A stretch of DNA of 64,000 nt from the IMG/VR virus record IMGVR_UViG_3300033182_000674, positions 1-64,000 of that record, one strand, 5' to 3'. The notes beneath the pieces are model-generated. The model worked only from the letters and a program-made list of their open reading frames with translations, made no database searches and had not been told where the DNA came from. Position numbers and translations under genes: made by a program. Positions 31,562 through 45,811 of the stretch are shown in pieces. Numbering within the stretch: position 1 is the first letter of the stretch; each line of letters begins with the position of its first letter.

Positions 31562-31578
31562 ATTAACACCTCCATGTT

Positions 31579-31586: not shown

Positions 31587-31605
31587 TGCTTATTTATCAT
31601 TTCCA

Positions 31606-32760: not shown

Positions 32761-33381
32761 CTACTTTTTGCCTTTTTTATTCAAAACAACTTCAACATTA
32801 TCTGGTAGTGGTACATGTGAATGACCAGAAGCTGAAGTACTATATAGTACAAATTTTCTATCTTTGAACTCGTTAAACATACCTTTCCAAATAGGTCTCC
32901 AACGAGATGTGAGTCTCTCAGTATTTAAATTATCACGAGAGGATTTCATATATGAATCAGACGAACTGGTAATATCAAATGCAAATATAGAATCAAATCC
33001 ATACATATGAATTTCATCAGCTTTAAGCTTATTCATGATATAATGTGTAGCCATATGACCGCAGTTAAAGTCAGTATAGTTTGGTGCATACTTAGGTAAT
33101 ACAGTATAGAATTCTTTAATTTGATGAGCATGCTTCATGTAAAATGGTGCACGCATTTCCATATACTTCTTAGGTCTAGCTCCAAGTGTCCAATCACCTG
33201 GTACTTCAATAACGCCATCATCAATAGCTTTCATCATTTTAAAATCAACTAGAACAGATGTGTATAATCCTGGAATAGCAAAAGGAGGAATATTACATGC
33301 AACCTTTAATCCTTTCTTTTCACCTTTTAGAAACATTCCCGCTGATTTACCATTTCCAATTAAATGTACAGTCTTAGCCAT
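32761..33381 (-). CDS. Putative glycosyltransferase of the sialyltransferase/Maf-like fold
   Basis: VHLIGNGKS near the N-terminus; GHMATHY...ADEIHMYGFD. Confidence 0.5.
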   Translation of the reverse strand: MAKTVHLIGNGKSAGMFLKGEKKGLKVACNIPPFAIPGLYTSVLVDFKMMKAIDDGVIEVPGDWTLGARPKKYMEMRAPFYMKHAHQIKEFYTVLPKYAPNYTDFNCGHMATHYIMNKLKADEIHMYGFDSIFAFDITSSSDSYMKSSRDNLNTERLTSRWRPIWKGMFNEFKDRKFVLYSTSASGHSHVPLPDNVEVVLNKKGKK

Positions 33382-33386
33382 TTATT

Positions 33387-33935
33387 TTATTCCTTATGTG
33401 TATACCAAATATTATCTGGTCCAATGTTATATCCTAAAATACTTATACCTGACAAATGAGTACTACCAAACTCTTCATCTATTGCCTTTTTAACTTCTGG
33501 CATATCAATATCATGTCCAGATACTAAACCACCTTTTTTAACTTTTGGATACCATGCATGAATATCCTTTTTAACTCCAGCATAACTATGATCAGCGTCA
33601 ATAAATACAAAGTCTAATGAATTATCTTCGATATCATTTGCTGCTAATGCTGTAAAATTTCTAACTATTTTTGCTCTAGGTTTATAATTGTCAGCAAACT
33701 CTAATAAATCTTTATACCAAGGTGCTGGCTCTTTTTCTAATAGTTTTTCTGTAGTAGTGATTCCTTCTGCTTTCCAAATTCTATCATTAAAGAATACATC
33801 TACGCCATATAGTGTTAAATTAGGACAATTTTCAATAAGATGTTTAAATGTTGGTCCACGTAATACACCAAGTTCAGCACCTATTTTATAATCATTATCT
33901 TTTATAATTTTCTCAAGCCATAATTTTCTATTCAC
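33387..33935 (-). CDS. Class I SAM methyltransferase (Methyltransf_24-like)
   Basis: GAELGVLRG, LYGVD, SLDFVFIDADHSY..VKKDI..W..KVKKGG.VSGHD. Confidence 0.88.
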   Translation of the reverse strand: MNRKLWLEKIIKDNDYKIGAELGVLRGPTFKHLIENCPNLTLYGVDVFFNDRIWKAEGITTTEKLLEKEPAPWYKDLLEFADNYKPRAKIVRNFTALAANDIEDNSLDFVFIDADHSYAGVKKDIHAWYPKVKKGGLVSGHDIDMPEVKKAIDEEFGSTHLSGISILGYNIGPDNIWYTHKE

Positions 33936-34594
33936 AATTTGCTCCTAATATATTCTTTACCTTTTGGTCCAGTCCAATGCACTGCTTTCTTCTTATTGCT
34001 GTCTTGACCATCTAATAATTGAATACGTAACCAATTATATTCGTTTGGTACATCATTAATATACATTAATCTTGTTAGAGGATTATTCATCATTGAGTGT
34101 AGAACCTCTTGATCTCCAACCTGTGGATTTTGTTCTACATTATAAGCCCATTGATGTAAAATCTGTGGTGAATCTTTAAAAGCCACAACTCCTGAATTAT
34201 GCCATGTCATACCACGACGTTTAGTCCAAGGCTTATCTTCCACCATTGCTAACTTATTATCTATACAATAATTAAAAACACCTGAGATATCATCCAATAC
34301 TTCGATATCAGTATCTATCCAACATGTATAATTAGCTTTTTTAGAAGCAGTAATCATTGACTTTGGTTTTTTAAACCAACCTTGTTCAGTTAAATGTGAT
34401 AGATCAATTACTTCTGATACTTTAGATTTTTCTAATTTATTTAATGCTTCTTTTGACATACCAAAGTTAGCAACAATCATTGGTGTATCATTATGTTTAA
34501 AATAACCATCTAAAAACCATTCTAGCATCCATTCAGTATTTGTATCGCATCCTGTTAAGAATACTTTATCATACGATGTCATAACCAGTTCCAC
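33932..34594 (-). CDS. GT-A glycosyltransferase (GT8/GT77-like)
   Basis: WFKKP, CWIDTD (DxD), HNSGVV, GDQEVL, YNWLR, HWTG.KGK. Confidence 0.75.
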   Translation of the reverse strand: MELVMTSYDKVFLTGCDTNTEWMLEWFLDGYFKHNDTPMIVANFGMSKEALNKLEKSKVSEVIDLSHLTEQGWFKKPKSMITASKKANYTCWIDTDIEVLDDISGVFNYCIDNKLAMVEDKPWTKRRGMTWHNSGVVAFKDSPQILHQWAYNVEQNPQVGDQEVLHSMMNNPLTRLMYINDVPNEYNWLRIQLLDGQDSNKKKAVHWTGPKGKEYIRSKL

Positions 34595-35219
34595 CTTTCC
34601 AATTGTGTTTTGCTAAACAACCTTCTTCTTTTTGAATTGTAGTAAATGTATCTCTAGCTTCTACTGCCCAAGGATAATATTCTTCAAGCCAAGGGAAATT
34701 ACTTGTATTTAGAAATACATCTGTTGGTCTAGCATCAGTCTTTGCTTTTTCAATAATAGCTTTTGCGCCTAATCTATTTAGCATATAAGCATGAGCACCA
34801 GGTAAATATGGTTTAGACGTTAAAGGATTAACACCAAACATATTAGGTGTATTATATTTACCATATGATGGGTGACCAAATGAAATAAGTTTATTATAAA
34901 CTACAATTTTTGGAATAGGTCCAACAAAATATGCATCATGCTCTAGTATAAGATAATCATCATTATCTTTTGCTGCCATTTCCCATAATGAATAATGAGA
35001 TAAAAATGCTGCAACACAATTTTCTAAACGAGAATACTTCTCATTGAATCCATCTACGGGAATTCCTTTTTCTTCTAATAGCTTTAATGGATTATCTGAT
35101 GGTGTAATAGCTTTAAATATTTGAACATCAATATCATAAGTCTTAGCTGTATCAATACATCTATTTGCAGCCTTCATAGATAATTCATTATCTTCTATAG
35201 CAATAACAAAAGCTTTCAT
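34569..35219 (-). CDS. Glycosyltransferase family 25
   Basis: FKAITP, AAFLSHYSLWE, LILEHDA, GAHAYML. Confidence 0.85.
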   Translation of the reverse strand: MKAFVIAIEDNELSMKAANRCIDTAKTYDIDVQIFKAITPSDNPLKLLEEKGIPVDGFNEKYSRLENCVAAFLSHYSLWEMAAKDNDDYLILEHDAYFVGPIPKIVVYNKLISFGHPSYGKYNTPNMFGVNPLTSKPYLPGAHAYMLNRLGAKAIIEKAKTDARPTDVFLNTSNFPWLEEYYPWAVEARDTFTTIQKEEGCLAKHNWKGGTGYDIV

Positions 35220-35228
35220 TTCAAAACC

Positions 35229-35924
35229 TCATTCGGTCGTGGTCGATTTTAATTTTTGTGTATCAGTGTAATATGTTTTAGTTACACCTAATTCACCTGG
35301 CATTAATTGTTTACACATTATAGCATCATTAGGCCATAACCCAAATTGATTAACCAACTCTATTAGATGCTTAGCTGCACTAGGTTTAATTATATATGCA
35401 GAGTTTCCAGCCAAACCTTGTGGTACGTTATCAGAATCTATTGATGGTACTGGTTGAAAATCATTATCTTTACTTTGAATTTTACTATCAAACAAATGAG
35501 CTTTACGAGTATTACCAATAGGATTGTTGATACCTATTATACCATATTTTGTATCAGTCGTGTTAAAATTTATTTTCTTTTTAAAAATTGCATCATGTTC
35601 TAATATAAGAATTGGCTCATCATCTTCAACACATTTCTTCCATAGATTATAATGACTCATAGCACAAGCAATTCTACTATCTGGATTCTTTGTAGGATAT
35701 GCTTTCTTTAGTAAGCCAGAAGCCATATCAAGCCCACCACCAGTCCAAGGATAATTCCATTTAACACCATTAATGGCCATATCTTTATTTACATTAATAG
35801 GTGTGATTGCATCAAATCTTTCAATTTGAAAATCATTACTAACTTTTTCAGAGCTTTCTACTAATTTAGAATAAGCAGACTCAGATAATTCGTTATCTTT
35901 TATTACTATACAATATGCTTTCAT
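35229..35924 (-). CDS. Glycosyltransferase family 25
   Basis: RFDAITP, IACAMSHYNLWKK, ILILEHDA, GNSAYIIKP.AAK.L, PND. Confidence 0.88.
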   Translation of the reverse strand: MKAYCIVIKDNELSESAYSKLVESSEKVSNDFQIERFDAITPINVNKDMAINGVKWNYPWTGGGLDMASGLLKKAYPTKNPDSRIACAMSHYNLWKKCVEDDEPILILEHDAIFKKKINFNTTDTKYGIIGINNPIGNTRKAHLFDSKIQSKDNDFQPVPSIDSDNVPQGLAGNSAYIIKPSAAKHLIELVNQFGLWPNDAIMCKQLMPGELGVTKTYYTDTQKLKSTTTE

Positions 35925-36598
35925 ATTTTCTTAGATGAAGAATTTAATTCTTTTTCCTTTATATATTTTACTGGAGATGGATGAATATAATACAAAGAGA
36001 ATAATTCATCGTCAAACAATAAATCGTTTTGTGTCCAGCCGTTTGTTTTACACCAATCAACAATAATTTTACACGCTTCTGGTGTTAGAATATACCCAGT
36101 ACCGCCTGCAAAATATTTTTTACCGTGAGGATGTACATAAAACACTTTATGTAATCCATCACCATTTATATTTAATTGTGTTGTATTCTTTAAATTATTA
36201 TAATGCTTTAAGGCAATAAGCATACTATCAGTTGTTAATTGTATACCTAATGGAGTATTCATATTAAAATTATTTGGAATATTTAAATCACCACAACAAA
36301 CTGTATCATGTTCAACAATAGCAATAGGTTCATTTAATTCTATACATTTTACCCATAATTCATAATGTGAATAGAAACAAGCTTTCTTTGTTAATGCTAA
36401 TTTTTGATTACTATATTTTTTAGTTAATTCACCAGTCTTAATATTATACTTTTTATCGTAATCATTTAATATTGAAGGATAACATCCATCATGTAATTGT
36501 GGTTCCCATCCTTTATATTTTAAAAAGGTATCATAAGATTCTTTGGCAATCTTTTCAGATTGATCATATATTGAATTATATACTATAAATGTTTTCAT
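35921..36598 (-). CDS. Glycosyltransferase family 25
   Basis: ACFYSHYELW.KC...IAIVEHD, GTGYILTPEAC..I. Confidence 0.82.
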   Translation of the reverse strand: MKTFIVYNSIYDQSEKIAKESYDTFLKYKGWEPQLHDGCYPSILNDYDKKYNIKTGELTKKYSNQKLALTKKACFYSHYELWVKCIELNEPIAIVEHDTVCCGDLNIPNNFNMNTPLGIQLTTDSMLIALKHYNNLKNTTQLNINGDGLHKVFYVHPHGKKYFAGGTGYILTPEACKIIVDWCKTNGWTQNDLLFDDELFSLYYIHPSPVKYIKEKELNSSSKKI

Positions 36599-36600
36599 AA

Positions 36601-37263
36601 TTAAAAATCGTAATTAAATGCTTCAATATCTCTTTTATACAAATTAGCAATTAAATCTTTACTCTCGGTTGAAAATAATTCTTTATAAGCTTTATTATTA
36701 TTTTTAGACGGATTAGTCCTTTTGTCAAAAGACTTGTCTTTAAAAAATGGTATTTGTTGCATATCATCTTTTAAATTTTCAATTTTACAAATTTTGTCGA
36801 ATATTGATACATCTTTTATCCATGTCATTTGATCATGTGCTAAGCTAAACCAAGTATTATTCCAAGGGAGGTTAACATTAATGTGTAACCATTCATTAAA
36901 ATCTTTTTCCATTAAATTAAGTTCATTTAATAAAATAGTATCTGGTACTCTTTTAAACTTTCTAATTCGACTAGTTGTTTTTTTATATAATGAATTTGCT
37001 AATATTTCTTTTCTAAAAAAATACCAACTGCATACTCTATCCCAAGGATTTCTAACAACAGTAAACTTATAATATGAATTAAAATCAGGAATTTGTTTTT
37101 GACACATATCAATTGTAGAATGATAATTACCATCTGTTGTTTTATTATTAGTTACTTCATAGATATCTTTATTAATTCTGCCCATTGCAACTCTAACTGA
37201 TTTACCAGCAGTTTTAGGAATATGAACAAAGAGTAATTTTTCTTTTGGTGAATATACACTCAT
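36601..37263 (-). CDS. Sulfotransferase family 2
   Basis: FVHIPKTAGKS (5'-PAPS loop), FTVVRNPWDRVCSWY, YKRDIEAFNYDF. Confidence 0.9.
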   Translation of the reverse strand: MSVYSPKEKLLFVHIPKTAGKSVRVAMGRINKDIYEVTNNKTTDGNYHSTIDMCQKQIPDFNSYYKFTVVRNPWDRVCSWYFFRKEILANSLYKKTTSRIRKFKRVPDTILLNELNLMEKDFNEWLHINVNLPWNNTWFSLAHDQMTWIKDVSIFDKICKIENLKDDMQQIPFFKDKSFDKRTNPSKNNNKAYKELFSTESKDLIANLYKRDIEAFNYDF

Positions 37264-37904
37264 TAAGTAATATCCTTAGTAAAAATAATATTATATTGAT
37301 TAGTATATTCTTCATCTCTAAAAGATGAAGTAAAACCTTGAGAATGTAAAAAGTCTATAATCTTATTATCTATAACCTGATCTTTCCAGAATTGTTTGCT
37401 TTCTACTTCTATCTTTATCAAAGATGTTTTTTCTAAAATTGATTTAGCACCAACTAATACTTCGTAGCCAACACCTTCAACGTCTATCCACATTGCAATA
37501 TTATTATATTCATTAGAAAACATATGATCGATTTTATCTACAGAAACTGTAACATGTTCATAATGAACATTACTTTCTGTTCTTTCAAGTATAGAATTAT
37601 TCTTTTTGGTTTTAGGCATGATTCTGCCATTATTAGTCAATTGAACATAAAATGTAGTTTTACCAACATAATCTGATATTGCTAAATTATTAAATTCAAT
37701 ATTAGAAGGAAGTGTATCTTTAAACATATCATAATTATAAGGATTAGCTTCGTATGCAATTACTCTACATTCAGGAACTAATTTTTTTACTTTACAACTT
37801 GTTTGTGCATTAAATGAACCAATTTCTAAAAATAAGTCAGGTTTAGTATCAGAAATTAAAGAATAAAATTTCTGATCTAACTCATTTACATCTAATGTTT
37901 TCAT
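37263..37904 (-). CDS. FkbM-family methyltransferase
   Basis: FLEIGSFNA, IAYEANP, NLAISD, MWIDVEG.GYEVL.GA. Confidence 0.88.
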   Translation of the reverse strand: MKTLDVNELDQKFYSLISDTKPDLFLEIGSFNAQTSCKVKKLVPECRVIAYEANPYNYDMFKDTLPSNIEFNNLAISDYVGKTTFYVQLTNNGRIMPKTKKNNSILERTESNVHYEHVTVSVDKIDHMFSNEYNNIAMWIDVEGVGYEVLVGAKSILEKTSLIKIEVESKQFWKDQVIDNKIIDFLHSQGFTSSFRDEEYTNQYNIIFTKDIT

Positions 37905-38686
37905 AATATAACCTTTTTTAATTGTTCTATGTTATTACCACGATCTAGTAGTTTATCTCTTAAGAAGAAATGAACAAAGTATGCTTCCTTAATCTTATCA
38001 TCAATAACACCTTTATACAAAGCATTCCATTTCCAATCCATGTTTTTTACTTTCATCTTTTCTCTCTTAACCCATGTATTTAAAAGAGTCTGATCTGTAG
38101 ACCATTTCCACGCACCGATGCCATCAACAAAATCTTTAAATTCTGGACGGCGAATAAATTGTTCTGGCGTATCACCTCTTAGGTAAGTATCTATACTTTT
38201 ATTAAAGACCATTAATCCCATATTAAAGAATTCAGCACCAAGACTATTCCACTTCCAATCAACATCTTTTAATGAATCATATTGCATTCTAGAATAATTA
38301 ATAATCTTTCTTTTATAGTCTTCAGTTAATGGCATTTCACGTTCTACAACTCCGCCAAAATCGTAACTCGAATCCAAATCATCAAAAATATTAGGTGCTG
38401 TATCACGTATATAGATGTCAGCGTCCACAATAGAAATTTGATCGTATTGCCCCAAATAACCAAAAGCATTTTCTTTTTCATAGATTGGCAAAAAGCCTCC
38501 ATGTTTTTCATAAGACTCTTTACTACGATTAGTAGCAAATACATCAGGCTTAATTGCAAGAATAGGATGTCGTTGTACAATATGATCTATATCGTATTTC
38601 TTACAATACGCTGCAACTGATTCTACACAAAAATCATATAGTTTATTTCGTTGGCCAACATAGACCTGATAGATTAATCGTTTCAC
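37901..38686 (-). CDS. GT-A glycosyltransferase (GT8-like)
   Basis: IVDADIYI (DxD), FFNMGLMV, TDQTLLN, KWNAL, FVHFF. Confidence 0.8.
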   Translation of the reverse strand: MKRLIYQVYVGQRNKLYDFCVESVAAYCKKYDIDHIVQRHPILAIKPDVFATNRSKESYEKHGGFLPIYEKENAFGYLGQYDQISIVDADIYIRDTAPNIFDDLDSSYDFGGVVEREMPLTEDYKRKIINYSRMQYDSLKDVDWKWNSLGAEFFNMGLMVFNKSIDTYLRGDTPEQFIRRPEFKDFVDGIGAWKWSTDQTLLNTWVKREKMKVKNMDWKWNALYKGVIDDKIKEAYFVHFFLRDKLLDRGNNIEQLKKVIL

Positions 38687-39522
38687 TTCAATACCTCTGG
38701 ATAAAATGCTTCATAGAACCATTTATTACTATTAATAATATGATTATGAAATCCATCACTTAATTTTCTATTTGGTTCTTTCCACGGTAATAATTGTGGT
38801 TTAGTTACATGTTCTGTTTTTTCTGCGAAGTAAGCATTATCATGTTCAAACATTTCTGATTGAGTAATATTATTTAGATCATGTTTATATGGTTTAAGCT
38901 CTAAGAATTCATATACCTTTTCTATGATATATATTGGATCTTTAAGGAAGTCTTCGTAACGAAGAAACTGAATTCTTTCTGGTTGTTCATTCCACAGGTA
39001 CATAAGCTTTCTAACTTCTTTATTTAAGCCTTCATGTAAACTTGTTTCTTTAAAATCTAAATAATAAGATAGCTTTTCATTTTCTGTCATAGAATTATAA
39101 GGCGTATCATTTTGACCAAGAGTATCATATGCAGCAAAAGAAGAATTTAATTTATCAAAGCTTTCTATTACATCTCGTAGATCACGAATAGTAACAAGTA
39201 TCTTTGACTTTGGAAAGAGGTGATGTAAATCACTCCAGTTTCTGGCTTTTGATATAACACTTGGTTTATTAGTTAAACCTGAATACCAGCCTTGAGCACC
39301 ATAAGTAATTAATCCATGATAAGCCGCATCAGCTTGTCTAACAGACATTGCTTGGACTTGTTCATTATAGCGTGAACGAGTTAATATCTTCTTATGAAGA
39401 ATAAAAGGAAGCGGATCAGTTGTAGTGGTAAATACTTCTGGATTCTGTTGAAGTATATTCATCAATACTGTAGATCCAGAACGTGGTAAACCACTACATA
39501 AATGTAAATTTTTCATATTCAT
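38683..39522 (-). CDS. Sulfotransferase (P-loop type)
   Basis: SGLPRSGSTVL..IL.QNP, KILVTIRDLRDVIES, LRYEDFL.DP. Confidence 0.9.
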   Translation of the reverse strand: MNMKNLHLCSGLPRSGSTVLMNILQQNPEVFTTTTDPLPFILHKKILTRSRYNEQVQAMSVRQADAAYHGLITYGAQGWYSGLTNKPSVISKARNWSDLHHLFPKSKILVTIRDLRDVIESFDKLNSSFAAYDTLGQNDTPYNSMTENEKLSYYLDFKETSLHEGLNKEVRKLMYLWNEQPERIQFLRYEDFLKDPIYIIEKVYEFLELKPYKHDLNNITQSEMFEHDNAYFAEKTEHVTKPQLLPWKEPNRKLSDGFHNHIINSNKWFYEAFYPEVLK

Positions 39523-39565
39523 AGTATATATTATATCACAAAATAATGTTAATGTAAATTATTCT

Positions 39566-40984
39566 TTAGTATTGTTGTCCTGCTGACCTATATCTACCAG
39601 AGGTTATATCACCTACATCTGTTGCATTAGCATCTGATGCGAATGGGAACTTATCTATAACATTAACATAGCCATCAGTTGCATTAAAGCCACCAGATGA
39701 ATAACCATCTGATGTAGATGATTGACCTGTTACACCCCATCTAGAATGAGTCAGATCACCAACATCGGTTGCATTGCCATCGGTTGCAAATGAAAACTTG
39801 TCGATGATCGTCTGAACCGAACCGGCGTCGCCACCAGAAGTATAACCATGCTCAGAAGAAGATTGACCTGCTGCACCATATCTAGTAACGGTTATATCAC
39901 CGACATCTGTTGCATTAGCATCAGTTGCGAATGGGAATTTGTCTATAACATTGCCACCATAATTTAGTCCACCTGAAGTATAACCATGCTCAGAAGAAGA
40001 TTGTCCTGCTGAATAACCTCTAGCAATGGTTAGATCGCCGACATCAGTCGCATTTCCATTTGTTGCAAACGGGAATTTGTCAATTACATTTATATTATAA
40101 GCACCAGAATTGTATCCATACTCAGTTGATGATTGGCCTGATAAATAATATCTACCAACGGTTAGATTACCGACATCTGTTGCATTAGCATCAACTGCGA
40201 ATGGGAATTTGTCTATAACATTTCCAACTGCTGGTACGGGTGAACCACCAGAAGTATATCCATTTTCTGCAGAAGATTGACCTGCTGGATAACTTCGGTT
40301 TGTAGTACTTAAATTAGCAACAAATATTGAGTTCGCATCAGATGCAAATGGGAACTTTTCAATGAGAGTTTCACCACCGGCACCACCACTATTGTATCCA
40401 TAATTAGAACCTTGAGCTTGAGTGCCACCTGCAGCAAATGATATAGTAAATTCAGACAACGCAGTAGCAAGGTTATTACCATCAGATGCTCTGAAAGTAA
40501 CATCAAAAGTACCGCCTTCTGAATCATAACCAGCACTTAATATATCTGCAAGGGACTTAGCAGTAATCGTAAACGTACCATTAGAATCGTTCGTAATAGT
40601 CGCAAGATCATTACCCGAATCTGTTACTAAGTAAGACCATTGAATTGGAAATCCATCTGGATCTGTCGCGGCCAATGTAATAGTAGTTGCAATTCCACCA
40701 ATAGAGTCTAGATCATAAGCAGCTTCTGGTAAACCACCAGAATCCCAAGTAGGAGTAGCATTAATTAAAGCAATACTATACCAACCAGATCCATTCCAGA
40801 TGTATAGTTTATTATTTGATGCTACAAATGCTTGATCACCAATTTGATTGCCGGTTGCTGGTAAATTATCAATAGTAGCATAATCTTCAGTGCCTAAAGG
40901 AACATCTGCTGAAATAGCAGTTTCACCAATTTTACCATCTTGGCCGATGATTTTTGTTAGATAAAAAGATTTAGTAATTGCCAT
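39566..40984 (-). CDS. Array B paralog 4: N-module plus six-repeat propeller
   Basis: Same N-module and IDKFPFA.DANATDVGD repeats as 12529-13965; ends GQQY. Confidence 0.88.
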   Translation of the reverse strand: MAITKSFYLTKIIGQDGKIGETAISADVPLGTEDYATIDNLPATGNQIGDQAFVASNNKLYIWNGSGWYSIALINATPTWDSGGLPEAAYDLDSIGGIATTITLAATDPDGFPIQWSYLVTDSGNDLATITNDSNGTFTITAKSLADILSAGYDSEGGTFDVTFRASDGNNLATALSEFTISFAAGGTQAQGSNYGYNSGGAGGETLIEKFPFASDANSIFVANLSTTNRSYPAGQSSAENGYTSGGSPVPAVGNVIDKFPFAVDANATDVGNLTVGRYYLSGQSSTEYGYNSGAYNINVIDKFPFATNGNATDVGDLTIARGYSAGQSSSEHGYTSGGLNYGGNVIDKFPFATDANATDVGDITVTRYGAAGQSSSEHGYTSGGDAGSVQTIIDKFSFATDGNATDVGDLTHSRWGVTGQSSTSDGYSSGGFNATDGYVNVIDKFPFASDANATDVGDITSGRYRSAGQQY

Positions 40985-40996
40985 TTCTTTTATTCC

Positions 40997-42451
40997 TTAA
41001 ATTTGATAACCACCGGTATGTTCTGGTCCGCCAGTCATTGATAAAACTGATTGTGAAGTAATTTCATTTGCATAAGCAAATTTTATTTTCTGACTGCTGC
41101 TGCCGGTGCTTACATATGCACTTGTTAATTCACATGAAGAAGCGCCATATTGATTACTTTGTGATAAATCTCCAACATTTGAAGTATTCCCTTCATTGGC
41201 AAATGGCATTTTTCTTAATGTTGCGTAGTAAGTACCAAATATTAAATCTCGGCCGCCATATGCATAACCATCAGTTGCACTAGCAGCACCCACAGGACCA
41301 TTACGAGCTCCATCTATGTTACCTATATTACCTAAAGAACCATTACTTGCAAAACTATATTTTTGTATATTACTCAATGCCGCTTGAGATGGGGGAAAAT
41401 ACTGGCCGCCAGCAACATAACCATTCTCTACACCGTTCATTGGTGCTTGATCTACTGATTTTTGTGTTAAACTACCACTGTTTATTGGTGTTTCGGATGC
41501 AAAAGGATATCGTTTAACTGCAGCTTGAACTGGTGGATTCCATGAATATGGGTTATAACCGCCCATTCTATAACCATCTGTTTCGGAAGACATTCCAGCT
41601 CCACCATATAGATTGTAAGCAAAACTACTTTCTATTGAGGTTGTTGGAAAAGTAACAGTTGAGCCACCTGCTGCAAATGGAAATTTTGCAACGTTATTAT
41701 TATTTCCATTTGGTACTCCTGGATAAGTATAACCACTAAATACATATCCAGCTTCTTTTGATGACATACCTACATGATAGCCTCGTACACTTGGCGCTCC
41801 ATTAATTGGGTGATATGCTTCAGTTGTAATAGTTTCAGAAGCATATGGAAATCTTAGTATTTGATTAGCAGTTGTATAATAACCAGTAGTTGATCCTTGA
41901 AATACATATGGAATATATAAACTAATTGTAAATTCAGACAAAGCTGAGGCAATATTAATTCCATCTGTTGCTCTAAAAGTAACATTAAACGTTCCACCTG
42001 TTGAATCATATGATTCAATTTGAGATGTTGGTAATGCTGTAATAGTAAATACACTTGAATCTTGTTGAATAGTTGCCAAATATTGAGCAGAATCAGATGC
42101 TGAATAATCCCACGTAATAGGTAATCCTTCAGGATCAGATGCTGATAATTGTATAATAGTTGAACCAACATTATACGAATCTAATTCGTATTCTGCTGCA
42201 GGTTGACCACCAGAATCCCATGTGGGACTCTGATTGATTAAAGCGATATTATACCAACCGGCTCCAGTCCAAATGTATAAACGATTTGTCGCTTGTACAA
42301 ATGCTTGATCACCTACTTGATTACCAGTTGCAGGTAAGTCATTTGCTGTAGTATAATCTTCAGTACCTAATGGAACATCGGCACTCAACTTTTCAGTATT
42401 AATTGTAGTTGAGGTATTTAATAGTTTTGATAAATTAACTGAATTAGACAT
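40997..42451 (-). CDS. Array B paralog 3: N-module plus divergent propeller
   Basis: N-module intact; repeats diverged (RFPYASE, KFPFAAG, RYPFASE, KYSFASN, KMPFANE). Confidence 0.8.
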   Translation of the reverse strand: MSNSVNLSKLLNTSTTINTEKLSADVPLGTEDYTTANDLPATGNQVGDQAFVQATNRLYIWTGAGWYNIALINQSPTWDSGGQPAAEYELDSYNVGSTIIQLSASDPEGLPITWDYSASDSAQYLATIQQDSSVFTITALPTSQIESYDSTGGTFNVTFRATDGINIASALSEFTISLYIPYVFQGSTTGYYTTANQILRFPYASETITTEAYHPINGAPSVRGYHVGMSSKEAGYVFSGYTYPGVPNGNNNNVAKFPFAAGGSTVTFPTTSIESSFAYNLYGGAGMSSETDGYRMGGYNPYSWNPPVQAAVKRYPFASETPINSGSLTQKSVDQAPMNGVENGYVAGGQYFPPSQAALSNIQKYSFASNGSLGNIGNIDGARNGPVGAASATDGYAYGGRDLIFGTYYATLRKMPFANEGNTSNVGDLSQSNQYGASSCELTSAYVSTGSSSQKIKFAYANEITSQSVLSMTGGPEHTGGYQI

Positions 42452-42461
42452 TTTTTATTTC

Positions 42462-43556
42462 CTATACCGTTATGATACTGCCTTCTGTTATGTTTGACCA
42501 TGTAGGATTACCATTTGTTTGATTTGATCTCAATGTCGCAAAGGTTACCCAATTTGCTGCATCATAAGTACCGTTTAAATTTCCAGTGTAATATTGTAAT
42601 AATGTTTCTTGTGGGCATCTATTAGGTCGTGCACCAATAAATGTTCTCAAATTTAATGAACCACCTTCCATTGCAGTGTATTCAATTGGATCATGTAAAT
42701 ACCATGCGATCCAATGTCCTGTTCCAGATGACCAAGATGTTCTTGCACCATTAAACATATTACCAGGACCAGCATCCCAACCACCATTATACGTTGTTTG
42801 TGTAAATGGATCACTGGCGTTTGAAGTATATATGCCATATTTTCCAGGAACTGGTATTTGCCCATATGTTGCGGACATAGCAGTTCCAGATGTTCCTGAC
42901 GTTGATAATCTAGTACCATCGCCTAAATAAATTCCTCCAGCATTATCAATATCCCAGAGATAATAACTTGGACCAACACTAGCATATAATCTCCACAATT
43001 GGAAAGTATTTGGCGCCCAACCTAATGTAAAGTTTGAACTTGCTGTTGCTGTATTTACTCCATCAGATGCTTTAAATGTAATATCAAATGAACCACCACT
43101 TGAATCATATCCAGCATCTAAAATATTTTGTAATGACTTTGGTGCAATTATAAACGTTCCATTTGAATCATTTGTAACTGTAACAAAATCATCACCTGAA
43201 TCCATTTCGTAAGTCCAATTTAAGACTTGCTCTTCTGGATCAGTTGCGATCAAATTAATTGTTGTTGAAGCAACAGAATCTAATACATACGCTGCTTCAG
43301 GTAATCCTGCAGAATCCCATATTGGAGATTCATTTACTAATGATATATTGTACCAACCTTGTCCATTCCAAAGATATAATCTATTTGTAGAAGCAACATA
43401 GGCTGTATCACCAGTATCATTACCACTTAATGGTAAATCATTTGGCGTTGCATAATCTTCAGTACCTAATGGTACTTCATCGGAAATAGCAGTTTGAACA
43501 ATCTTACCATTATCTCCAATTATTAAACCAAGATTAAAAGACTTTGAAACGGCCAT
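42462..43556 (-). CDS. Array B paralog 2: N-module plus unrelated C-terminal domain (possibly discoidin-like)
   Basis: N-module, then NMFNG..SW..WIAWY..PNRCP..LQY..NWV pattern. Confidence 0.72.
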   Translation of the reverse strand: MAVSKSFNLGLIIGDNGKIVQTAISDEVPLGTEDYATPNDLPLSGNDTGDTAYVASTNRLYLWNGQGWYNISLVNESPIWDSAGLPEAAYVLDSVASTTINLIATDPEEQVLNWTYEMDSGDDFVTVTNDSNGTFIIAPKSLQNILDAGYDSSGGSFDITFKASDGVNTATASSNFTLGWAPNTFQLWRLYASVGPSYYLWDIDNAGGIYLGDGTRLSTSGTSGTAMSATYGQIPVPGKYGIYTSNASDPFTQTTYNGGWDAGPGNMFNGARTSWSSGTGHWIAWYLHDPIEYTAMEGGSLNLRTFIGARPNRCPQETLLQYYTGNLNGTYDAANWVTFATLRSNQTNGNPTWSNITEGSIITV

Positions 43557-43559
43557 ATA

Positions 43560-44714
43560 TTAATCCATTGTTAATGTATCAATATAATCATTAGCATCCA
43601 TCATACGAACAGATGGTGTAGTGCCAGATCTTCTATTACAGCTAGCACCAATGTATGTTACACCACTAACTGTACCATCACCAATTTTAACCCAGTTATT
43701 ACTAGTATGACTAGATTGTCTATACCACCAACGTGATACGCCATTTGCAACTCTTACAGCAAACCACCAATCAGTACAAGTAGAACCTTGATATGCATTA
43801 TATGTAGTGTCAATACCAGTAAAACCAAAGCCATTCGAATCAGTATCATTACTTAATCGACTAACACCTTCAACAACTTGATTACTTGCGTTGTATAAGT
43901 ACATACCACCACCACCTCTATTACTGAAGCTGGTCGCATAACCAGAGAAATAATATACTGCTAAGTATTCATCACCTAATTCCATTGTCCTTGGTTGAAC
44001 ATGCATACCATCAAACATTTTGGTTGTACTTGTAAGAGTCCATGTCCCAGTGTTAGCATCGTATGAATCAGTCCATGTACCACCATCACTATACGCATCT
44101 AATAAAACACGAGTTGAATTAGCCCAAGCATCTCCTTGAGTATCTAAGTTAACTGCAACACCATTGGAAAAGGTAATTGTAAATTCTGATACAGCACCAA
44201 TGATATTAATACCATCAGTCGCTCTAAATGTTACAGCAGCAGTACCACCTGCAGAATCATATCCAGCTGCTAGAATATCTTCAAGTGTTTTCGCAGTAAT
44301 TGTAAACTCATCATTGTTTTGAGAAATTGTAAATAGATCTGCAGCAGAATCAGCTGCTTCATATGTCCATTGTATAGGTAAACCTTCTGGATCAGATGCA
44401 GCCAATTGAATTACAATAGGTGTTCCACTATTTGAATCCAGTTCATATGCAGCTTGAGGTTGGCCATTGGAGTCCCATATTGGACTTTCATTAATTAAAG
44501 CAATATTATACCAGCCAGCTCCAGTCCAGACATAAAGACGATTTGTTTCAGCGACATAAGCTTGATCACCAACTTGATTACCAGTAGATGGTAATTGCGT
44601 GGCTGTACTATAGTCTTCGGTTCCTAGTGGAATATCTTCAGACAAAGCTTGTGTTGATATCTTGTTATCTTGTCCAAGAATTAAGCCTAAATTAAAAGAC
44701 TTAGATACAGCCAT
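43560..44714 (-). CDS. Array B paralog 1: N-module plus unrelated beta-sandwich-like C-terminus
   Basis: N-module, then Trp/Tyr-rich strands (WWFAVRV..VSRWWYR..WVKIG). Confidence 0.72.
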   Translation of the reverse strand: MAVSKSFNLGLILGQDNKISTQALSEDIPLGTEDYSTATQLPSTGNQVGDQAYVAETNRLYVWTGAGWYNIALINESPIWDSNGQPQAAYELDSNSGTPIVIQLAASDPEGLPIQWTYEAADSAADLFTISQNNDEFTITAKTLEDILAAGYDSAGGTAAVTFRATDGINIIGAVSEFTITFSNGVAVNLDTQGDAWANSTRVLLDAYSDGGTWTDSYDANTGTWTLTSTTKMFDGMHVQPRTMELGDEYLAVYYFSGYATSFSNRGGGGMYLYNASNQVVEGVSRLSNDTDSNGFGFTGIDTTYNAYQGSTCTDWWFAVRVANGVSRWWYRQSSHTSNNWVKIGDGTVSGVTYIGASCNRRSGTTPSVRMMDANDYIDTLTMD

Positions 44715-44726: not shown

Positions 44727-45668
44727 TTAGTTATCAGTTGTTTCTTCGGTTGGTTCTTTATAACCAATCATCTTATCATAACTAATACCTTCTGTGATAC
44801 CATTCTTGAATCCCATCGTATTCATACGAATTTCATCAACTTTCACCACATCAATCAATTCATTGACTACTGTATCTACGAATTCATGTAGACCACTAGT
44901 GTCCCAGCTACCAGTAGATAACTCTTGCTGAATATAAGCTTTAATTGTTACCAACATTTTAGTTGGATTAACGCCTATTTGCTCAAGGTATTCCTGTTCG
45001 CCTTTGGTAATAGAACCATATTGTCTTACGTCACGAATACATTGAACAACACTTCTTTTCAGATGAGCTTTTGACTCTTGTTTCTCAATGTCTTCTTCAT
45101 TAAATTCGCCCATATTTTCTTGTAATTGTTCATACAAGTCAGTAAGAGCTAGAATGTCTTTCATAGCACCTTCAATATATGTTGTGCCACTTGCCATTCC
45201 TTCTTTTAATTCGAGAAGTTTTACTTTAAGATCAACTTCTCTCCAGTATTCGATTTCAGGATTAGAAAGTTCTTCTTCTATCTTTTTAATCTTAACTTCG
45301 TTTTTAACTTGTCGCCACTTAGCTTCATTCAAAGCTGATTTCTTACTAGAAATCTCAGCAGCAATTTGTCTCATATTCTTTTCAGGACTATGGTAAGATA
45401 AATTAATATGTTTCCACATCCATTGTGTATGGCTTCTATTCCAAATGTTTTGAAGATCTTGAGTCTTCGCTAACGCTTGGTCAACCATAACACTATTCTC
45501 TACAAGACTTCTACCACCAAATGATTCAGTCTTTGCGAGTGTACCATGTCCAAATACTTTTGATACAGGTACATTATATTCAGATCCGTCGGTTACAATT
45601 AAATCTTGTCTAATCTCTTCAAATAGAGTTAATTCAGTATTTAATTCTTTAGTGTCTGTTTCAGCCAT
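44727..45668 (-). CDS. Coiled-coil-rich protein heading array B (313 aa)
   Basis: WNRSHTQWMWK..NMRQIAAEI..KK.AL.E motif; co-transcribed with the array. Confidence 0.65.
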   Translation of the reverse strand: MAETDTKELNTELTLFEEIRQDLIVTDGSEYNVPVSKVFGHGTLAKTESFGGRSLVENSVMVDQALAKTQDLQNIWNRSHTQWMWKHINLSYHSPEKNMRQIAAEISSKKSALNEAKWRQVKNEVKIKKIEEELSNPEIEYWREVDLKVKLLELKEGMASGTTYIEGAMKDILALTDLYEQLQENMGEFNEEDIEKQESKAHLKRSVVQCIRDVRQYGSITKGEQEYLEQIGVNPTKMLVTIKAYIQQELSTGSWDTSGLHEFVDTVVNELIDVVKVDEIRMNTMGFKNGITEGISYDKMIGYKEPTEETTDN

Positions 45669-45811
45669 TATATTTTATCCTCAACTAATTCCTTAAGAAG
45701 ATCATAAGCATCTTTTTCTTGCATGCTTAAAGTTCTTAGGATTTCACTTAGTTCAATTGTTGTTAAATCTAATATAGATTCTGCTAGTTGCATTTCCATA
45801 GTTCTTTCCTA

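What the first reader, a model, noticed from the sequence alone, without database searches (positions are those of the whole stretch)
32761..39522. Ten-gene glycan-building cluster directly downstream of array B
Six glycosyltransferase-like genes (three GT25, two GT8-like, one sialyltransferase/Maf-like fold), two sulfotransferases and two methyltransferases follow the propeller genes on the same strand. No nucleotide-sugar synthesis or export genes were seen. The acceptor is therefore probably cytoplasmic: the Ser/Thr/Asn-rich array proteins or other virion proteins, giving a sulfated, methylated virion glycan. Host LPS remodelling is the alternative. Sulfotransferases need host PAPS, which links to sulfur metabolism (inference).
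Basis: partly seen in the sequence, partly recalled or inferred. Interest (0 to 1): 0.68.

Follow-up and report, generated by a model that had tools for sequence, protein, structure and literature searches.

The report
Marine phage glycan-building gene island
Ten tightly packed enzyme genes in an uncultured marine T4-like phage are real. They are two modules joined end to end: a sulfotransferase that travels with the phage's propeller-fibre genes, and a widespread, strain-variable sugar-chain assembly island whose target molecule is still unknown.

Summary
Window 32761-39522 carries ten co-oriented, mostly overlapping minus-strand genes. They are three GT25 glycosyltransferases, two GT8-like glycosyltransferases, one sialyltransferase/Maf-like protein, two PAPS-type sulfotransferases and two SAM methyltransferases.

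The block is composite. The first gene, g01, is a sulfotransferase whose nearest solved relatives are protein-tyrosine sulfotransferases (weak match). In 14 other phage contigs it sits inside propeller-array modules, usually beside a 2OG-Fe(II) oxygenase, and never beside g02-g10.

g02-g10 form a phage-specific glycan island. A conserved frame (g02 ... g06-g07-g08-g10) recurs in well over 100 viral contigs. It brackets a 1.3-8.6 kb swappable cassette that carries GT8, epimerase, UDP-galactopyranose mutase, methyl-, sulfo- and pyruvyl-transferase genes.

The genome holds such genes 65-72 kb away, and relatives hold them inside the island. None of the ten proteins has a membrane segment.

The acceptor is unresolved:
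- Phage (virion) protein: about 0.4.
- Host envelope glycolipid: about 0.3.
- hmC-DNA: about 0.12. The genome has a T4 gp42-type hydroxymethylase, but two near-complete frame-bearing relatives show none.

This is a new variant of the known marine-phage "LPS-like" gene clusters.

The parts
38683..39522 (-). g01: PAPS-type sulfotransferase (279 aa). It is the terminal gene of the propeller-array module, not of the glycan island.
   Evidence: Pfam Sulfotransfer_3 at 8e-17 and Sulfotransfer_1 at 1e-12. The 5'-PSB (GLPRSGST) and 3'-PB (IRDLRDVIES) motifs are visible. The closest solved sequences are TPST1 and TPST2, E 0.005-0.02. In 14 IMG/VR loci it lies beside array-type genes (12 of 14) and a u6-type oxygenase (11 of 14 directly downstream), and never beside g02-g10.
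37901..38686 (-). g02: GT8-like retaining GT-A glycosyltransferase (261 aa). It is the conserved upstream anchor of the island.
   Evidence: No Pfam hit. At least 588 relatives in IMG/VR. Invariant D88-x-D90, N155/G157, D198/Q199 and H239. hhalign to the g08 family gives 89.7%. AF2 pLDDT 93. Foldseek hits: UGGT 1e-9, A64R 1e-8 (TM by target 0.70), LgtC, glycogenin.
37263..37904 (-). g03: FkbM-family SAM methyltransferase (213 aa), a variable cassette gene.
   Evidence: Pfam Methyltransf_21 at 6e-17; TIGR01444. GC 25%. Not covered at 90% identity or more in run X2, which does hold g01 and g02.
36601..37263 (-). g04: Sulfotransfer_2 (carbohydrate-type) sulfotransferase (220 aa), a variable cassette gene.
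   Evidence: Pfam 5.5e-18. phrog_3347, 'galactose-3-O-sulfotransferase'. Distant homologues (24-28% identity) lie in the cassette of about 20 related loci. GC 25%.
35921..36598 (-). g05: GT25 glycosyltransferase (225 aa), a variable cassette copy.
   Evidence: Pfam Glyco_transf_25 at 1.8e-14. It is 26-28% identical to g06 and g07 and shares the SH..LW and EHD motifs. GC 26%.
35229..35924 (-). g06: GT25 glycosyltransferase (231 aa), a conserved frame gene.
   Evidence: Pfam 1.7e-19. Present in 97 of 134 related loci in fixed order. E109-H110-D111 conserved in at least 95% of 69 sequences.
34569..35219 (-). g07: GT25 glycosyltransferase (216 aa), a conserved frame gene.
   Evidence: Pfam 2.1e-10. 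Present in 94 of 134 loci. E93-H94-D95 conserved in at least 95% of 67 sequences.
33932..34594 (-). g08: GT8-like glycosyltransferase (220 aa), a conserved frame gene.
   Evidence: Weak Nucleotid_trans hit. The family profile hits glycogenin-1 and LgtC (E 2e-3). Invariant D94-x-D96, N133/G135, D161/Q162 and H206..G209.
33387..33935 (-). g09: Methyltransf_24 class-I SAM methyltransferase (182 aa), an insert between g08 and g10.
   Evidence: Pfam 3e-13. In most relatives g08 and g10 are adjacent. g09-like genes occur in 5 of the 134 loci, mostly inside the cassette.
32761..33381 (-). g10: sialyltransferase/Maf-like glycosyltransferase (206 aa), the conserved downstream anchor of the island.
   Evidence: No Pfam or PHROG hit. 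1488 unnamed protein clusters, many from marine (Tara) samples. Invariant G9-N10-G11. AF2 pLDDT 90. VIA-align: Maf 5mu5 Z 10.6, CstII Z 9.7, P. multocida sialyltransferase Z 9.4.
39530..39558 (-). Sigma-70-like promoter match (TTTACA, 17 nt, TG-n-TATAAT) that fills the 43-nt gap between u1 and g01.
   Evidence: 11 of 12 positions, extended -10; sequence seen. This is a consensus match only. The -10 element ends 7 nt before the ATG, and the motif is not conserved upstream of g01 in other phages.
39566..44714 (-). u1-u4: four propeller-array paralogues ('array B'). Context, and a candidate acceptor.
   Evidence: They share an N-terminal domain of about 185 aa, 42-62% identical among the nine paralogues of arrays A and B. 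S+T+N+G content is 37-41%, pI about 4. Atlas neighbours are virus-only FG-GAP, Ig or lactonase-like clusters, scores below 0.9.
44727..47151 (-). u5 (313 aa, acidic, unknown function) and u6 (443 aa, C-terminal 2OG-FeII_Oxy_3). These are array-module partners of g01.
   Evidence: Pfam 7e-19 for u6; phrog_61. u6 and u5 homologues flank g01 homologues in other phages. A TATAAATA motif lies at 45812-45819, upstream of u5.

Best explanation
The interval is two modules that abut in a hyperplastic region of an uncultured marine T4-like myovirus (219.7 kb).

Module 1 is the propeller-array module. It comprises the u6 oxygenase, u5, the array paralogues and the g01 sulfotransferase.

Module 2 (g02-g10) is a phage-specific, self-contained glycan-assembly island.
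- Five conserved soluble glycosyltransferases form its frame: GT8-like g02, GT25 g06 and g07, GT8-like g08, and sialyltransferase/Maf-like g10.
- Inferred: these build a conserved core oligosaccharide step by step in the infected cell's cytoplasm, using host (and in relatives phage-made) nucleotide sugars.
- Swap-in cassette genes add strain-specific sugar, methyl and sulfate decoration from SAM and PAPS. Here they are a third GT25 (g05), the FkbM methyltransferase g03, the carbohydrate-type sulfotransferase g04 and the Methyltransf_24 enzyme g09.

Shown: the gene families, the frame-plus-cassette architecture, its wide distribution, and the g01-array synteny.

Inferred: the acceptor. My best single guess is a phage-made protein displayed on the virion, with the propeller-array fibres as prime candidates. 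The system would then work like the virus-encoded capsid and fibril glycosylation of chloroviruses and mimiviruses, or like mycobacteriophage virion glycosylation. In this reading g01 and u6 separately sulfate and hydroxylate the propeller proteins.
For: Architecture:
- The order g02-[variable]-g06-g07-g08-g10 recurs in about 80-100 of 134 fetched viral loci. The g02-to-g06 gap ranges from 1.3 to 8.6 kb in 71 loci.
- Cassette families in relatives are GT8, SDR epimerase, UDP-galactopyranose mutase, FkbM/MT11/MT24 methyltransferases, ST2/ST4 sulfotransferases, pyruvyl transferase and a cytidylyltransferase-like protein.
- In the window the cassette genes g03-g05 have 25-26% GC, against 31-34% for the frame genes.
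- Run X2 holds g01 and g02 at about 96-98% identity but nothing at 90% or more over g03-g05.

Phage-specific:
- The g10 family has 1488 unnamed clusters.
- All 14 'bacterial' hits are MAG contigs. The eight with enough flanking sequence carry the same frame, and the rest are short or hold g10 alone, so they look like mis-binned phage DNA.

Soluble enzymes:
- No 19-residue window is hydrophobic enough for a membrane helix.
- Frame enzymes g02 and g06-g08 have pI 5.6-6.9; g10 is basic (pI 9.5).

Protein-acceptor leads:
- g02 matches the PBCV-1 capsid glycosyltransferase A64R.
- The top structural match of g10 is the flagellin O-glycosyltransferase Maf.
- The related cyanophage S-8S55 encodes a GT25 + PLOD-GT fusion, annotated as a 2OG-Fe(II) oxygenase-domain protein, in a run of 2OG-oxygenase genes about 1.5 kb downstream of a tail-fibre gene.
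- g01 travels with propeller arrays and a 2OG oxygenase in other phages.
- The array N-domain family has 7-9 paralogues in each of three 84-86%-complete genomes that carry the frame.
- An array gene lies directly upstream of g02 in the window and in 6 of 81 loci.
- A conserved five-enzyme core with variable decoration mirrors the chlorovirus conserved core glycan and the clade-specific mimivirus glycogene clusters, which include methyl-, pyruvyl- and sulfate-related genes (PMC9614988).
Against: - There is no direct evidence of any glycan on any protein.
- In most loci the island lies among DNA-metabolism genes (PhoH, RNase H, exonuclease, SegE), not structural genes.
- No TATAAATA late-promoter motif lies within 120 nt upstream of g02 in 73 distinct loci. 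Sigma-70-like motifs occur where a gap exists, suggesting early expression.
- GT25, GT8 and GT42-like enzymes are also the classic LOS outer-core toolkit (established knowledge). Published work on marine myophages favours host O-chain modification (PMC7029224; PMC12801897).
- GT8/A64R-like phage enzymes have been shown to extend glycans on 5hmC DNA, and this genome encodes a gp42-type hydroxymethylase.
- Genome-level co-occurrence of arrays and island may be shared ancestry only.
- In G006 the g01-array module and g02 lie about 75 kb apart.
Confidence: 0.4

Rival explanations
1. Host-envelope remodelling. The island's soluble or peripheral enzymes extend or decorate a host glycolipid at the inner face of the cytoplasmic membrane. 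That glycolipid could be lipid A-core/LOS or an undecaprenyl-linked O-antigen or capsule unit. Host machinery then exports the altered glycan. The infected cell's surface changes, which would block superinfection, stop progeny adsorbing to infected cells, or alter grazer recognition.
For: - GT25 (Lic2A/LpsA type), GT8 (LgtC/WaaJ type) and CstII-type sialyltransferases are the LOS outer-core enzyme families (established knowledge). Matches to LgtC and CstII appear.
- Sulfo-, methyl- and pyruvyl-transferases and Galf/deoxy-sugar genes in the cassettes are typical of O-antigen and EPS loci.
- A sigma-70-like promoter and a non-structural neighbourhood fit early expression.
- The same hyperplastic region encodes a signal-peptide porin, a lipoprotein and other exported proteins.
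- Strain-level cassette turnover mirrors host O-antigen island diversity.
- This is the published interpretation for pelagimyophages and cyanomyophages.
Against: - A frame of five glycosyltransferases conserved at 45-70% identity across very diverse phages needs a conserved acceptor, whereas host cores and O-units vary.
- No cellular homologues of the g10 family were found.
- The ten genes include no initiating phosphoglycosyl transferase, flippase, polymerase or Gtr-type membrane protein.
- The near-neutral or acidic pI of most frame enzymes is not what I expect of membrane-associated LOS transferases (weak argument).
- No lytic phage has been shown to rebuild LPS with a soluble multi-enzyme cluster, to my knowledge.
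Confidence: 0.3
2. DNA hypermodification. The phage makes 5-hydroxymethylcytosine DNA, and the island's glycosyltransferases build and decorate a glycan on that base to evade restriction. Cassette turnover would then reflect an arms race with glyco-DNA-specific nucleases.
For: - The genome encodes a full-length homologue of T4 dCMP hydroxymethylase (E 9e-71). Beside it lie a dCMP deaminase, a P-loop nucleotide kinase, a C5-methylase-like gene, UDP-galactopyranose mutase and sugar-nucleotide enzymes.
- Such thymidylate-synthase-homologue + kinase + GT + mutase clusters make glycosylated cytosines in RB69, DLP3 and RL38J1 (PMC13326640).
- GT8/A64R-like phage enzymes add second sugars to 5hmC glycans.
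- Mutase and epimerase genes sit inside the island in relatives.
- The island's early-type promoter and DNA-metabolism neighbours would fit.
Against: - Known DNA glycans have at most three sugars. Six glycosyltransferases plus sulfo- and methyl-transferases would be unprecedented and bulky.
- The island lies 65-72 kb from the hydroxymethylase cluster, whereas such pathways are usually clustered.
- Two 84-86%-complete frame-bearing genomes show no thymidylate-synthase homologue.
- No Tet/JBP domain was found in five genomes, but the control was silent, so this is weak.
- The experimentally studied arabinosyl/hexosyl DNA transferases of Lee et al. are GT-B, and the 5hmC-initiating GT-A enzymes are JGT/TarP-like, unlike GT25.
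- The hydroxymethylase cluster contains its own unassigned candidate genes of 381 and 202 aa.
Confidence: 0.12
3. Another acceptor. The island might glycosylate a host protein (flagellin, pilin or S-layer, as Maf does), or make a free or secreted oligosaccharide or small-molecule glycoside during infection.
For: - The best structural match of g10 is Maf, a flagellin glycosyltransferase.
- All ten enzymes are soluble, and no acceptor gene is conserved inside the island.
- FkbM-type methyltransferases and sulfotransferases also occur in natural-product and Nod-factor pathways (established knowledge). There is a faint NoeE match.
Against: No gene context supports it. The conserved neighbours are DNA-metabolism genes and small unknown ORFs. 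The idea is hard to reconcile with conservation across phages that probably have different hosts.
Confidence: 0.08

Closest known systems
'LPS-like' or cell-wall synthesis and modification gene clusters of marine T4-like myophages (P-SSM2, S-SCSM1, S-SCSM2R; pelagimyophage host-recognition clusters)
   Same: These are T4-like marine phages with hyperplastic regions holding many glycosyltransferases (GT8, GT25 and others), sugar epimerases and UDP-glucose dehydrogenase. Their function is untested and is usually ascribed to host O-chain modification (PMC7029224; PMC12801897).
   Different: g02 has no relative in any of about 50,700 deposited phage records. g10 has one only in phage C48C1. In the papers I could search I did not find the fixed five-enzyme frame around a swap cassette, the sulfotransferases, or the unannotated sialyltransferase/Maf-like family. 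This genome lacks psbA and CsgG.
Giant-virus virion glycosylation clusters (chlorovirus A64R and partners; mimivirus 6-33-gene fibril glycogene clusters)
   Same: Soluble virus-encoded GT-A enzymes plus methyl-, pyruvyl- and sulfate-related genes. A conserved core glycan carries clade- or strain-specific decoration. The acceptor is a virus structural protein (PMC9614988). g02 matches A64R structurally.
   Different: Those are eukaryotic viruses with a proven virion glycan. Here no glycan has been observed, the genes are not next to capsid genes, and the island lacks sugar-nucleotide synthesis genes in this genome.
Mycobacteriophage virion glycosylation (Freeman et al. 2023, cited in PMC12619734)
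   Same: Phage-encoded glycosyltransferases modify the phage's own capsid and tail-tube proteins.
   Different: Those clusters are small, in actinobacteriophages, and sit in the structural operon. The enzyme families were not compared here.
LOS outer-core glycosyltransferase sets of Haemophilus, Neisseria and Campylobacter (Lic2A/LpsA GT25, LgtC GT8, CstII/Lic3A GT42)
   Same: The same three enzyme families act together as soluble or peripheral enzymes without dedicated export genes (established knowledge). LgtC and CstII matches appear.
   Different: Sequence identity is very low (9-16% in the structural alignments). There are no cellular orthologues. The lipid A-core acceptor is not shown.
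Phage DNA glycan hypermodification gene clusters (Pyle et al.; Lee et al.)
   Same: These occur in T4-like and other phages. GT8/A64R-like secondary glycosyltransferases, epimerases and UDP-galactopyranose mutase take part. This genome has a gp42 homologue.
   Different: Known clusters sit beside the thymidylate-synthase homologue or the 5mYOX enzyme and add one to three sugars. The island is 65-72 kb away from the hydroxymethylase, has six glycosyltransferases plus sulfo- and methyl-transferases, and occurs in genomes without a detectable thymidylate-synthase homologue.

Membership tests
CAZy/Pfam GT25 (PF01755) | Sequence match above the curated Pfam threshold | tested here: met
   g05 scores 54.5 bits, g06 70.9 bits and g07 41.2 bits against a cut-off of 24; confirmed.
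CAZy/Pfam GT25 (PF01755) | Conserved catalytic-region motif kept across the family | tested here: met
   The S-H..L-W and E-H-D motifs are shared by the three paralogues. They are at least 95% conserved in 67-69 homologues. Transferase activity itself is not testable here.
GT8 (PF01501; LgtC and glycogenin type) | Sequence match to the family model | tested here: not met
   Neither g02 nor g08 reaches PF01501. Only a cassette paralogue in a relative does (27.5 bits). I therefore call them 'GT8-like', not members.
GT8 (PF01501; LgtC and glycogenin type) | Retaining GT-A fold with DxD, NxG, DQ and C-terminal His motifs | tested here: met
   The motifs are invariant in 42 and 39 homologues. The g08 profile hits glycogenin and LgtC. 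g02 is linked to g08 by hhalign. The g02 model matches UGGT, XXYLT1, LgtC, LARGE1 and glycogenin at probability 1.0.
Sialyltransferase GT42/GT29 or Maf (MAF_flag10) family | Sequence match to a family model | tested here: not met
   g10 has no Pfam, PHROG or NCBIfam hit. Neither the single sequence nor the profile gives a PDB sequence hit.
Sialyltransferase GT42/GT29 or Maf (MAF_flag10) family | Shared fold covering the whole domain | tested here: inconclusive
   VIA-align Z is 9.2-10.6 to Maf, CstII and the P. multocida sialyltransferase over 159-181 residues. Pyrophosphokinases and SteA of the same fold score 7.5-9.3. Foldseek TM scores are only 0.36-0.44. The CMP-sugar donor is not testable here.
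PAPS-dependent sulfotransferases | Family match plus 5'-PSB and 3'-PB PAPS-binding motifs | tested here: met
   g01 matches Sulfotransfer_3 at 62.6 bits and g04 matches Sulfotransfer_2 at 66.4 bits. The motifs GLPRSGST / IRDLRD..S (g01) and PKTAGKS / VRNPWDR..S (g04) can be read.
Protein-tyrosine sulfotransferase (TPST/RaxST type), for g01 | Specific similarity to TPSTs and a protein acceptor | tested here: inconclusive
   The seven best PDB sequence hits are TPST1, TPST2 or unnamed protein-tyrosine sulfotransferases, but only at E 0.005-0.02 and only over the PAPS-binding half. Synteny with propeller proteins supports a protein target. The acceptor is not testable here.
Class I SAM methyltransferases (FkbM; Methyltransf_24) | Sequence match above threshold | tested here: met
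   g03 matches PF05050 at 62.7 bits and TIGR01444 at 58.6 bits. g09 matches PF13578 at 51 bits.
Phage seroconversion systems (GtrABC and O-acetylase type) | Integral-membrane flippase or transferase components | tested here: not met
   None of the ten proteins has a hydrophobic 19-residue window (Kyte-Doolittle maximum 1.4 or less).
Complete O-antigen or capsule loci | Initiating phosphoglycosyl transferase plus flippase/polymerase or ABC exporter | tested here: not met
   These are absent from the ten genes. NTP_transferase and CTP_transf_3 are absent from the genome. The whole genome was not scanned for Wzx, Wzy or Wzm.
Phage DNA glycan hypermodification gene cluster | Glycosyltransferases clustered with a base-hydroxy(methyl)ating enzyme and a nucleotide kinase | tested here: not met
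   The gp42 homologue and kinase lie at about 108.4-109.5 kb, and the island at 32.8-38.7 kb. A thymidylate-synthase homologue was found in only 1 of 5 frame-bearing records (the records are 57-86% complete).
Virus-encoded virion glycosylation clusters (giant-virus type) | Glycan demonstrated on a virion protein | not testable with these tools
   No proteomic or chemical data exist for this phage. No RNA run holds the region.

The most novel reading that the evidence does not exclude
An abundant, uncultured clade of marine T4-like phages post-translationally dresses its own multi-paralogue propeller fibres. A phage-built, strain-variable, methylated and sulfated oligosaccharide would come from the island g02-g10. 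Direct protein sulfation and hydroxylation would come from the TPST-like g01 and the 2OG oxygenase u6. To my knowledge this would be the first virion glycosylation and sulfation system described in a phage outside the actinobacteriophages, and a new axis of phage surface diversity.
Probability: 0.3. Interest if true: 0.85.

Novelty: new variant of a known kind. Interest (0 to 1): 0.55.

Why it matters
Clusters of glycosyltransferase genes in marine T4-like phages have been noted for twenty years and are routinely labelled "LPS genes" without any test.

This locus shows that one very common version has a defined anatomy. A conserved five-enzyme core brackets a cassette that is swapped even between near-identical strains. 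It is phage-specific, and it comes close to, but is separable from, a propeller-fibre module that carries its own sulfotransferase and oxygenase.

That anatomy turns a vague annotation into three sharply testable alternatives: virion glycan, host-surface remodelling, or DNA glycan. Each has different consequences for host range, superinfection, restriction evasion and particle stickiness in the ocean.

It also gives names and models to two large unannotated protein families. The g02 family has at least 588 loci, and the g10 family has about 1,500 clusters.

Tried and rejected
- Nucleotide searches of the region and of neighbouring sequence against deposited phages gave only a 135-nt methyltransferase match or nothing.
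- Single-sequence and profile PDB sequence searches for g02 and g10 gave nothing useful.
- A bacterial origin or host assignment from genome contigs was rejected. The hits are MAG contigs of scattered taxonomy, most of them carrying the same phage frame, so mis-binned phage DNA.
- Reading the P-loop kinase at G000 108.4-108.8 kb as an APS kinase that supplies PAPS was considered. Pfam APS_kinase scores 31 bits, but the match is partial. The gene sits beside the gp42 homologue, as the nucleotide kinases of DNA-modification clusters do, and its PDB hits are generic. I left it ambiguous, leaning towards a nucleotide kinase.
- The conserved PLGTEDY motif in the array N-domain (seen in the N-termini printed) was considered as the tyrosine-sulfation site for g01. 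I dropped it because the arrays that accompany g01 in other phages share only the C-terminal propeller domain.
- The sigma-70-like site before g01 as a conserved promoter: it is not conserved in other g01 loci, and overall promoter-like counts equal the shuffled expectation.
- Expression evidence: no RNA run holds the region.
- Cyanophage or pelagimyophage identity: no psbA and no CsgG.
- CMP-sugar or NDP-sugar pyrophosphorylase genes in the genome: none.
- NCBIfam added nothing beyond FkbM.
- The large representative-protein search, the complex prediction and alternative genetic codes were not used because nothing required them.

Full report
**Setting.** The window is the first 64 kb of a 219,676-bp IMG/VR virus record that CheckV rates as 100% complete. 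Its GC content is 34%.
- It is a T4-like marine myovirus. Its gp32 is 59% identical to that of phage C48C1 (Kyanoviridae) and about 54-57% identical to those of OM43 phage Melnitz, pelagiphage HTVC008M and the cyanomyoviruses.
- It lacks psbA and CsgG, so it is neither a typical cyanophage nor a curli-bearing pelagimyophage.
- Near-identical DNA occurs in marine, estuarine and aquaculture metagenomes from ten studies. No RNA run holds it.

**Checking the observation.** Ten minus-strand ORFs fill 32761-39522, and most junctions are overlaps or gaps of a few bases.
- Seven ORFs pass Pfam's curated thresholds: two sulfotransferases (g01 Sulfotransfer_3/1; g04 Sulfotransfer_2), two methyltransferases (g03 FkbM, also TIGR01444; g09 Methyltransf_24), and three GT25 enzymes (g05, g06, g07). 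Both sulfotransferases show the two PAPS-binding motifs in their sequence.
- For the three unassigned genes I built family alignments from related loci.
- The g08 profile hits glycogenin and LgtC.
- The g02 and g08 profiles align at 89.7% probability, with the DxD, NxG, DQ and His motifs in register.
- The g02 model (pLDDT 93) matches GT8/GT24-type retaining GT-A enzymes and the PBCV-1 capsid glycosyltransferase A64R.
- The g10 model (pLDDT 90) matches Maf, CstII and other sialyltransferases at Z 9-10.6. Pyrophosphokinases with the same fold score just below.
GT8 and sialyltransferase hold as 'like', not as membership, because the family models themselves are not matched.

**The block is composite.** Fourteen IMG/VR loci hold a g01 homologue.
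- In 12 of the 14, g01 is embedded among genes that share the C-terminal propeller domain of the window's array proteins.
- In 11 of the 14 it is followed directly by a homologue of u6, the 2OG-Fe(II) oxygenase at 45820-47151, and usually by u5.
- None of the 14 has g02-g10 within 8 kb.
- g01 therefore belongs with the array module. Its nearest solved sequences are protein-tyrosine sulfotransferases, although weakly.
- In the window g01 overlaps g02 by 4 nt, so here the two modules are fused into one transcription unit.

**The glycan island.** g02 has at least 588 relatives in IMG/VR. The g10 family comprises 1488 unnamed 90%-identity clusters.
- Across 134 fetched loci the same-strand order g02 - variable stretch - g06 - g07 - g08 - g10 recurs. 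The g02-to-g06 distance ranges from 1.3 to 8.6 kb in 71 loci.
- The variable stretch holds extra GT8 genes (53 loci), SDR epimerase/dehydratases (37) and UDP-galactopyranose mutase (12). It also holds several methyltransferase classes, Sulfotransfer_2 and Sulfotransfer_4 enzymes, a polysaccharide pyruvyl transferase and a cytidylyltransferase-like gene.
- In the window the cassette is g03-g05. Its GC is 25-26%, against 31-34% for the frame genes. g09 is an extra insert between g08 and g10.
- Run X2 carries g01 and g02 at about 96-98% identity but nothing at 90% or more over g03-g05. Runs X1 and X4 cover 36000-39547 continuously. This points to cassette exchange at the g02/g03 border between close strains. 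The caveat is that contigs show presence, not absence.
- The island is phage-specific. The 14 hits in 185,579 prokaryote genomes are MAG contigs of scattered taxonomy. Most carry the same frame, and the rest are short fragments or hold g10 alone.
- Among deposited phages only C48C1 has a g10 homologue, and none has g02.

**Neighbourhood and timing.**
- In relatives the island is flanked upstream by PhoH, RNase H, DUF6433, an exonuclease and SegE-type genes, and downstream by small ORFs.
- The same flanking genes lie at 59.7-64 kb and at 6-30 kb of the window. Arrays A and B and other material are therefore insertions into a hyperplastic region.
- The late-promoter motif TATAAATA lies 35 nt upstream of the first gene of array A and in the gap before u5. 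It does not occur before g01, nor within 120 nt upstream of g02 in 73 distinct loci.
- A near-consensus sigma-70-type motif fills the 43-nt gap before g01. Similar motifs scoring 10-12 of 12 occur before g02 in most relatives that have a 40-150-nt gap there. These include the loci where an array gene is the upstream neighbour.
- These are consensus matches only. Overall counts equal those in shuffled sequence, and the motif is not conserved before g01 elsewhere.

**Links between arrays and island.**
- The nine array paralogues in the window share an N-terminal domain of about 185 aa and have variable, S/T/N/G-rich, acidic C-terminal domains. Their Atlas neighbours are virus-only propeller-like or Ig-like clusters.
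- The N-domain has 7-9 paralogues in each of three 84-86%-complete genomes that carry the frame.
- G006 (89% complete) has both the g01-array module and g02, about 75 kb apart.
- An array gene lies directly upstream of g02 in 6 of 81 loci.
- The two modules therefore co-occur at genome level and sometimes abut. This may be no more than shared ancestry.

**Sugar and sulfate supply.**
- At about 103-111.5 kb the genome encodes a C5-methylase-like protein, UDP-galactopyranose mutase, an SDR epimerase and a dCMP deaminase.
- The same stretch encodes a P-loop kinase, a cytidylyltransferase-like protein, GcvH, a cupin and a UDP-glucose-dehydrogenase-like protein.
- It also encodes a full-length homologue of T4 dCMP hydroxymethylase (E 9e-71).
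- That set resembles the DNA-hypermodification clusters described by Lee et al.. It probably serves hmC-DNA glycosylation.
- No NTP_transferase or CMP-sugar synthetase domain was found.

**Mechanism and acceptor.** All ten proteins lack membrane segments, and most are neutral to acidic. The chemistry therefore happens in the cytoplasm or at its membrane face.
- A frame of five transferases conserved across phages that differ by 30-55% in these proteins implies a conserved core glycan on a conserved acceptor. The cassette would supply strain-specific decoration.
- That logic is the same as the chlorovirus conserved-core N-glycan and the clade-specific mimivirus clusters, which include methyl-, pyruvyl- and sulfate-related genes.
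- Supporting leads for a phage-protein acceptor are the A64R and Maf structural matches, the g01/u6-array synteny, and a GT25 + PLOD-GT fusion in cyanophage S-8S55. That fusion is annotated as a 2OG-oxygenase-domain protein and lies about 1.5 kb downstream of a tail-fibre gene.
- On this basis I rank a phage-made virion protein as the most likely acceptor, at about 0.4.
- Host-envelope remodelling is close behind, at about 0.3. The three transferase families are the LOS outer-core toolkit, and the decoration enzymes are typical of O-antigen and EPS loci. The promoter motifs and the neighbourhood look early, exported-protein genes lie nearby, and this is the published view.
- DNA glycosylation gets about 0.12. 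It is made credible by the gp42 homologue and by proven GT8-like DNA-glycan extenders. It is weakened by three things: the size and chemistry of the cluster, its 65-72 kb distance from the hydroxymethylase, and frame-bearing genomes without a detectable thymidylate-synthase homologue.

**Novelty.** Multi-glycosyltransferase clusters in marine T4-like phages are a known but untested kind.
- New here are the resolved frame-plus-cassette anatomy, its scale in the virosphere, and the fold assignments for two large unannotated families.
- Also new are the separation of a sulfotransferase/oxygenase/propeller module from the glycan island, and the explicit three-way test of the acceptor.
- I rate it a new variant of a known kind, with interest 0.55.

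Noticed in passing
G000 (own genome) about 103,200-111,500, outside the window; locus L138:7207-15481: A second sugar and nucleotide cluster. It holds a C5-cytosine-methylase-like gene, UDP-galactopyranose mutase, an unknown 381-aa gene, an SDR epimerase, a dCMP deaminase and an unknown 202-aa gene. It also holds a P-loop kinase, a full-length homologue of T4 gp42 dCMP hydroxymethylase (E 9e-71), a cytidylyltransferase-like gene, GcvH, a cupin and a UDP-glucose-dehydrogenase-like gene. ThyX lies nearby. This suggests hmC DNA with a galactofuranose-type or similar sugar modification.
   Followed up: partly
window 7158-13965 (array A) and 39566-44714 (array B): Nine paralogues share an N-terminal domain of about 185 aa and have variable C-terminal domains with internal repeats of about 44 residues. 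TATAAATA lies 35 nt upstream of array A at 14000-14007. In other metagenomes this region assembles only as short, chimeric contigs, which suggests high microdiversity or repeat-driven breaks. Related genomes hold 7-9 such paralogues scattered across the genome.
   Followed up: partly
window 45820-47151 (u6) and 44727-45668 (u5); loci L166-L178: A conserved trio recurs inside propeller arrays of other phages: the g01-type sulfotransferase, a 2OG-Fe(II) oxygenase carrying an N-terminal domain of unknown function (PHROG label 'ferrochelatase'), and an acidic 313-aa protein. This may be a protein hydroxylation and sulfation system.
   Followed up: partly
window 27654-28508, 29188-29538, 25355-26341, 15930-16385: Phage-encoded exported proteins. 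One is a Porin_4 homologue with a signal peptide and a C-terminal Phe. One is a lipobox lipoprotein. Two are signal-peptide proteins, one of which has a glycine-zipper OMP motif.
   Followed up: no
window 30463-32566: A run of nuclease-like or homing-endonuclease-like genes lies immediately downstream of g10. d1 resembles an endonuclease or resolvase, d3 has NUMOD3 and endonuclease I-like matches, and d4 has a TnsA-like N-terminal domain. They could drive rearrangement of this region.
   Followed up: no
L155:3905-5770 (Synechococcus phage S-8S55, OQ504983.1): A 621-aa protein combines GT25 and the PLOD glycosyltransferase domain and is annotated as a 2OG-Fe(II) oxygenase. It lies in a run of 2OG-oxygenase genes about 1.5 kb downstream of a tail-fibre gene, with a tail assembly chaperone further on. 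The architecture resembles a collagen-type lysyl hydroxylase/glycosyltransferase, in a cyanophage.
   Followed up: partly
loci L140-L153 (GTDB genome contigs): Fourteen contigs binned into MAGs of Balneola, Flavobacteriaceae, Rhodobacteraceae, Opitutia, Melainabacteria, Microbacteriaceae and others carry this phage gene, most with the whole frame. They are probably mis-binned phage DNA, so their taxonomy gives no host information.
   Followed up: yes
window 47865-51837: A block of nine co-oriented plus-strand ORFs interrupts the otherwise minus-strand window, with a positive GC skew. TATAAATA lies at 47781-47788 on the plus strand, just upstream. It may be a late transcription unit.
   Followed up: no
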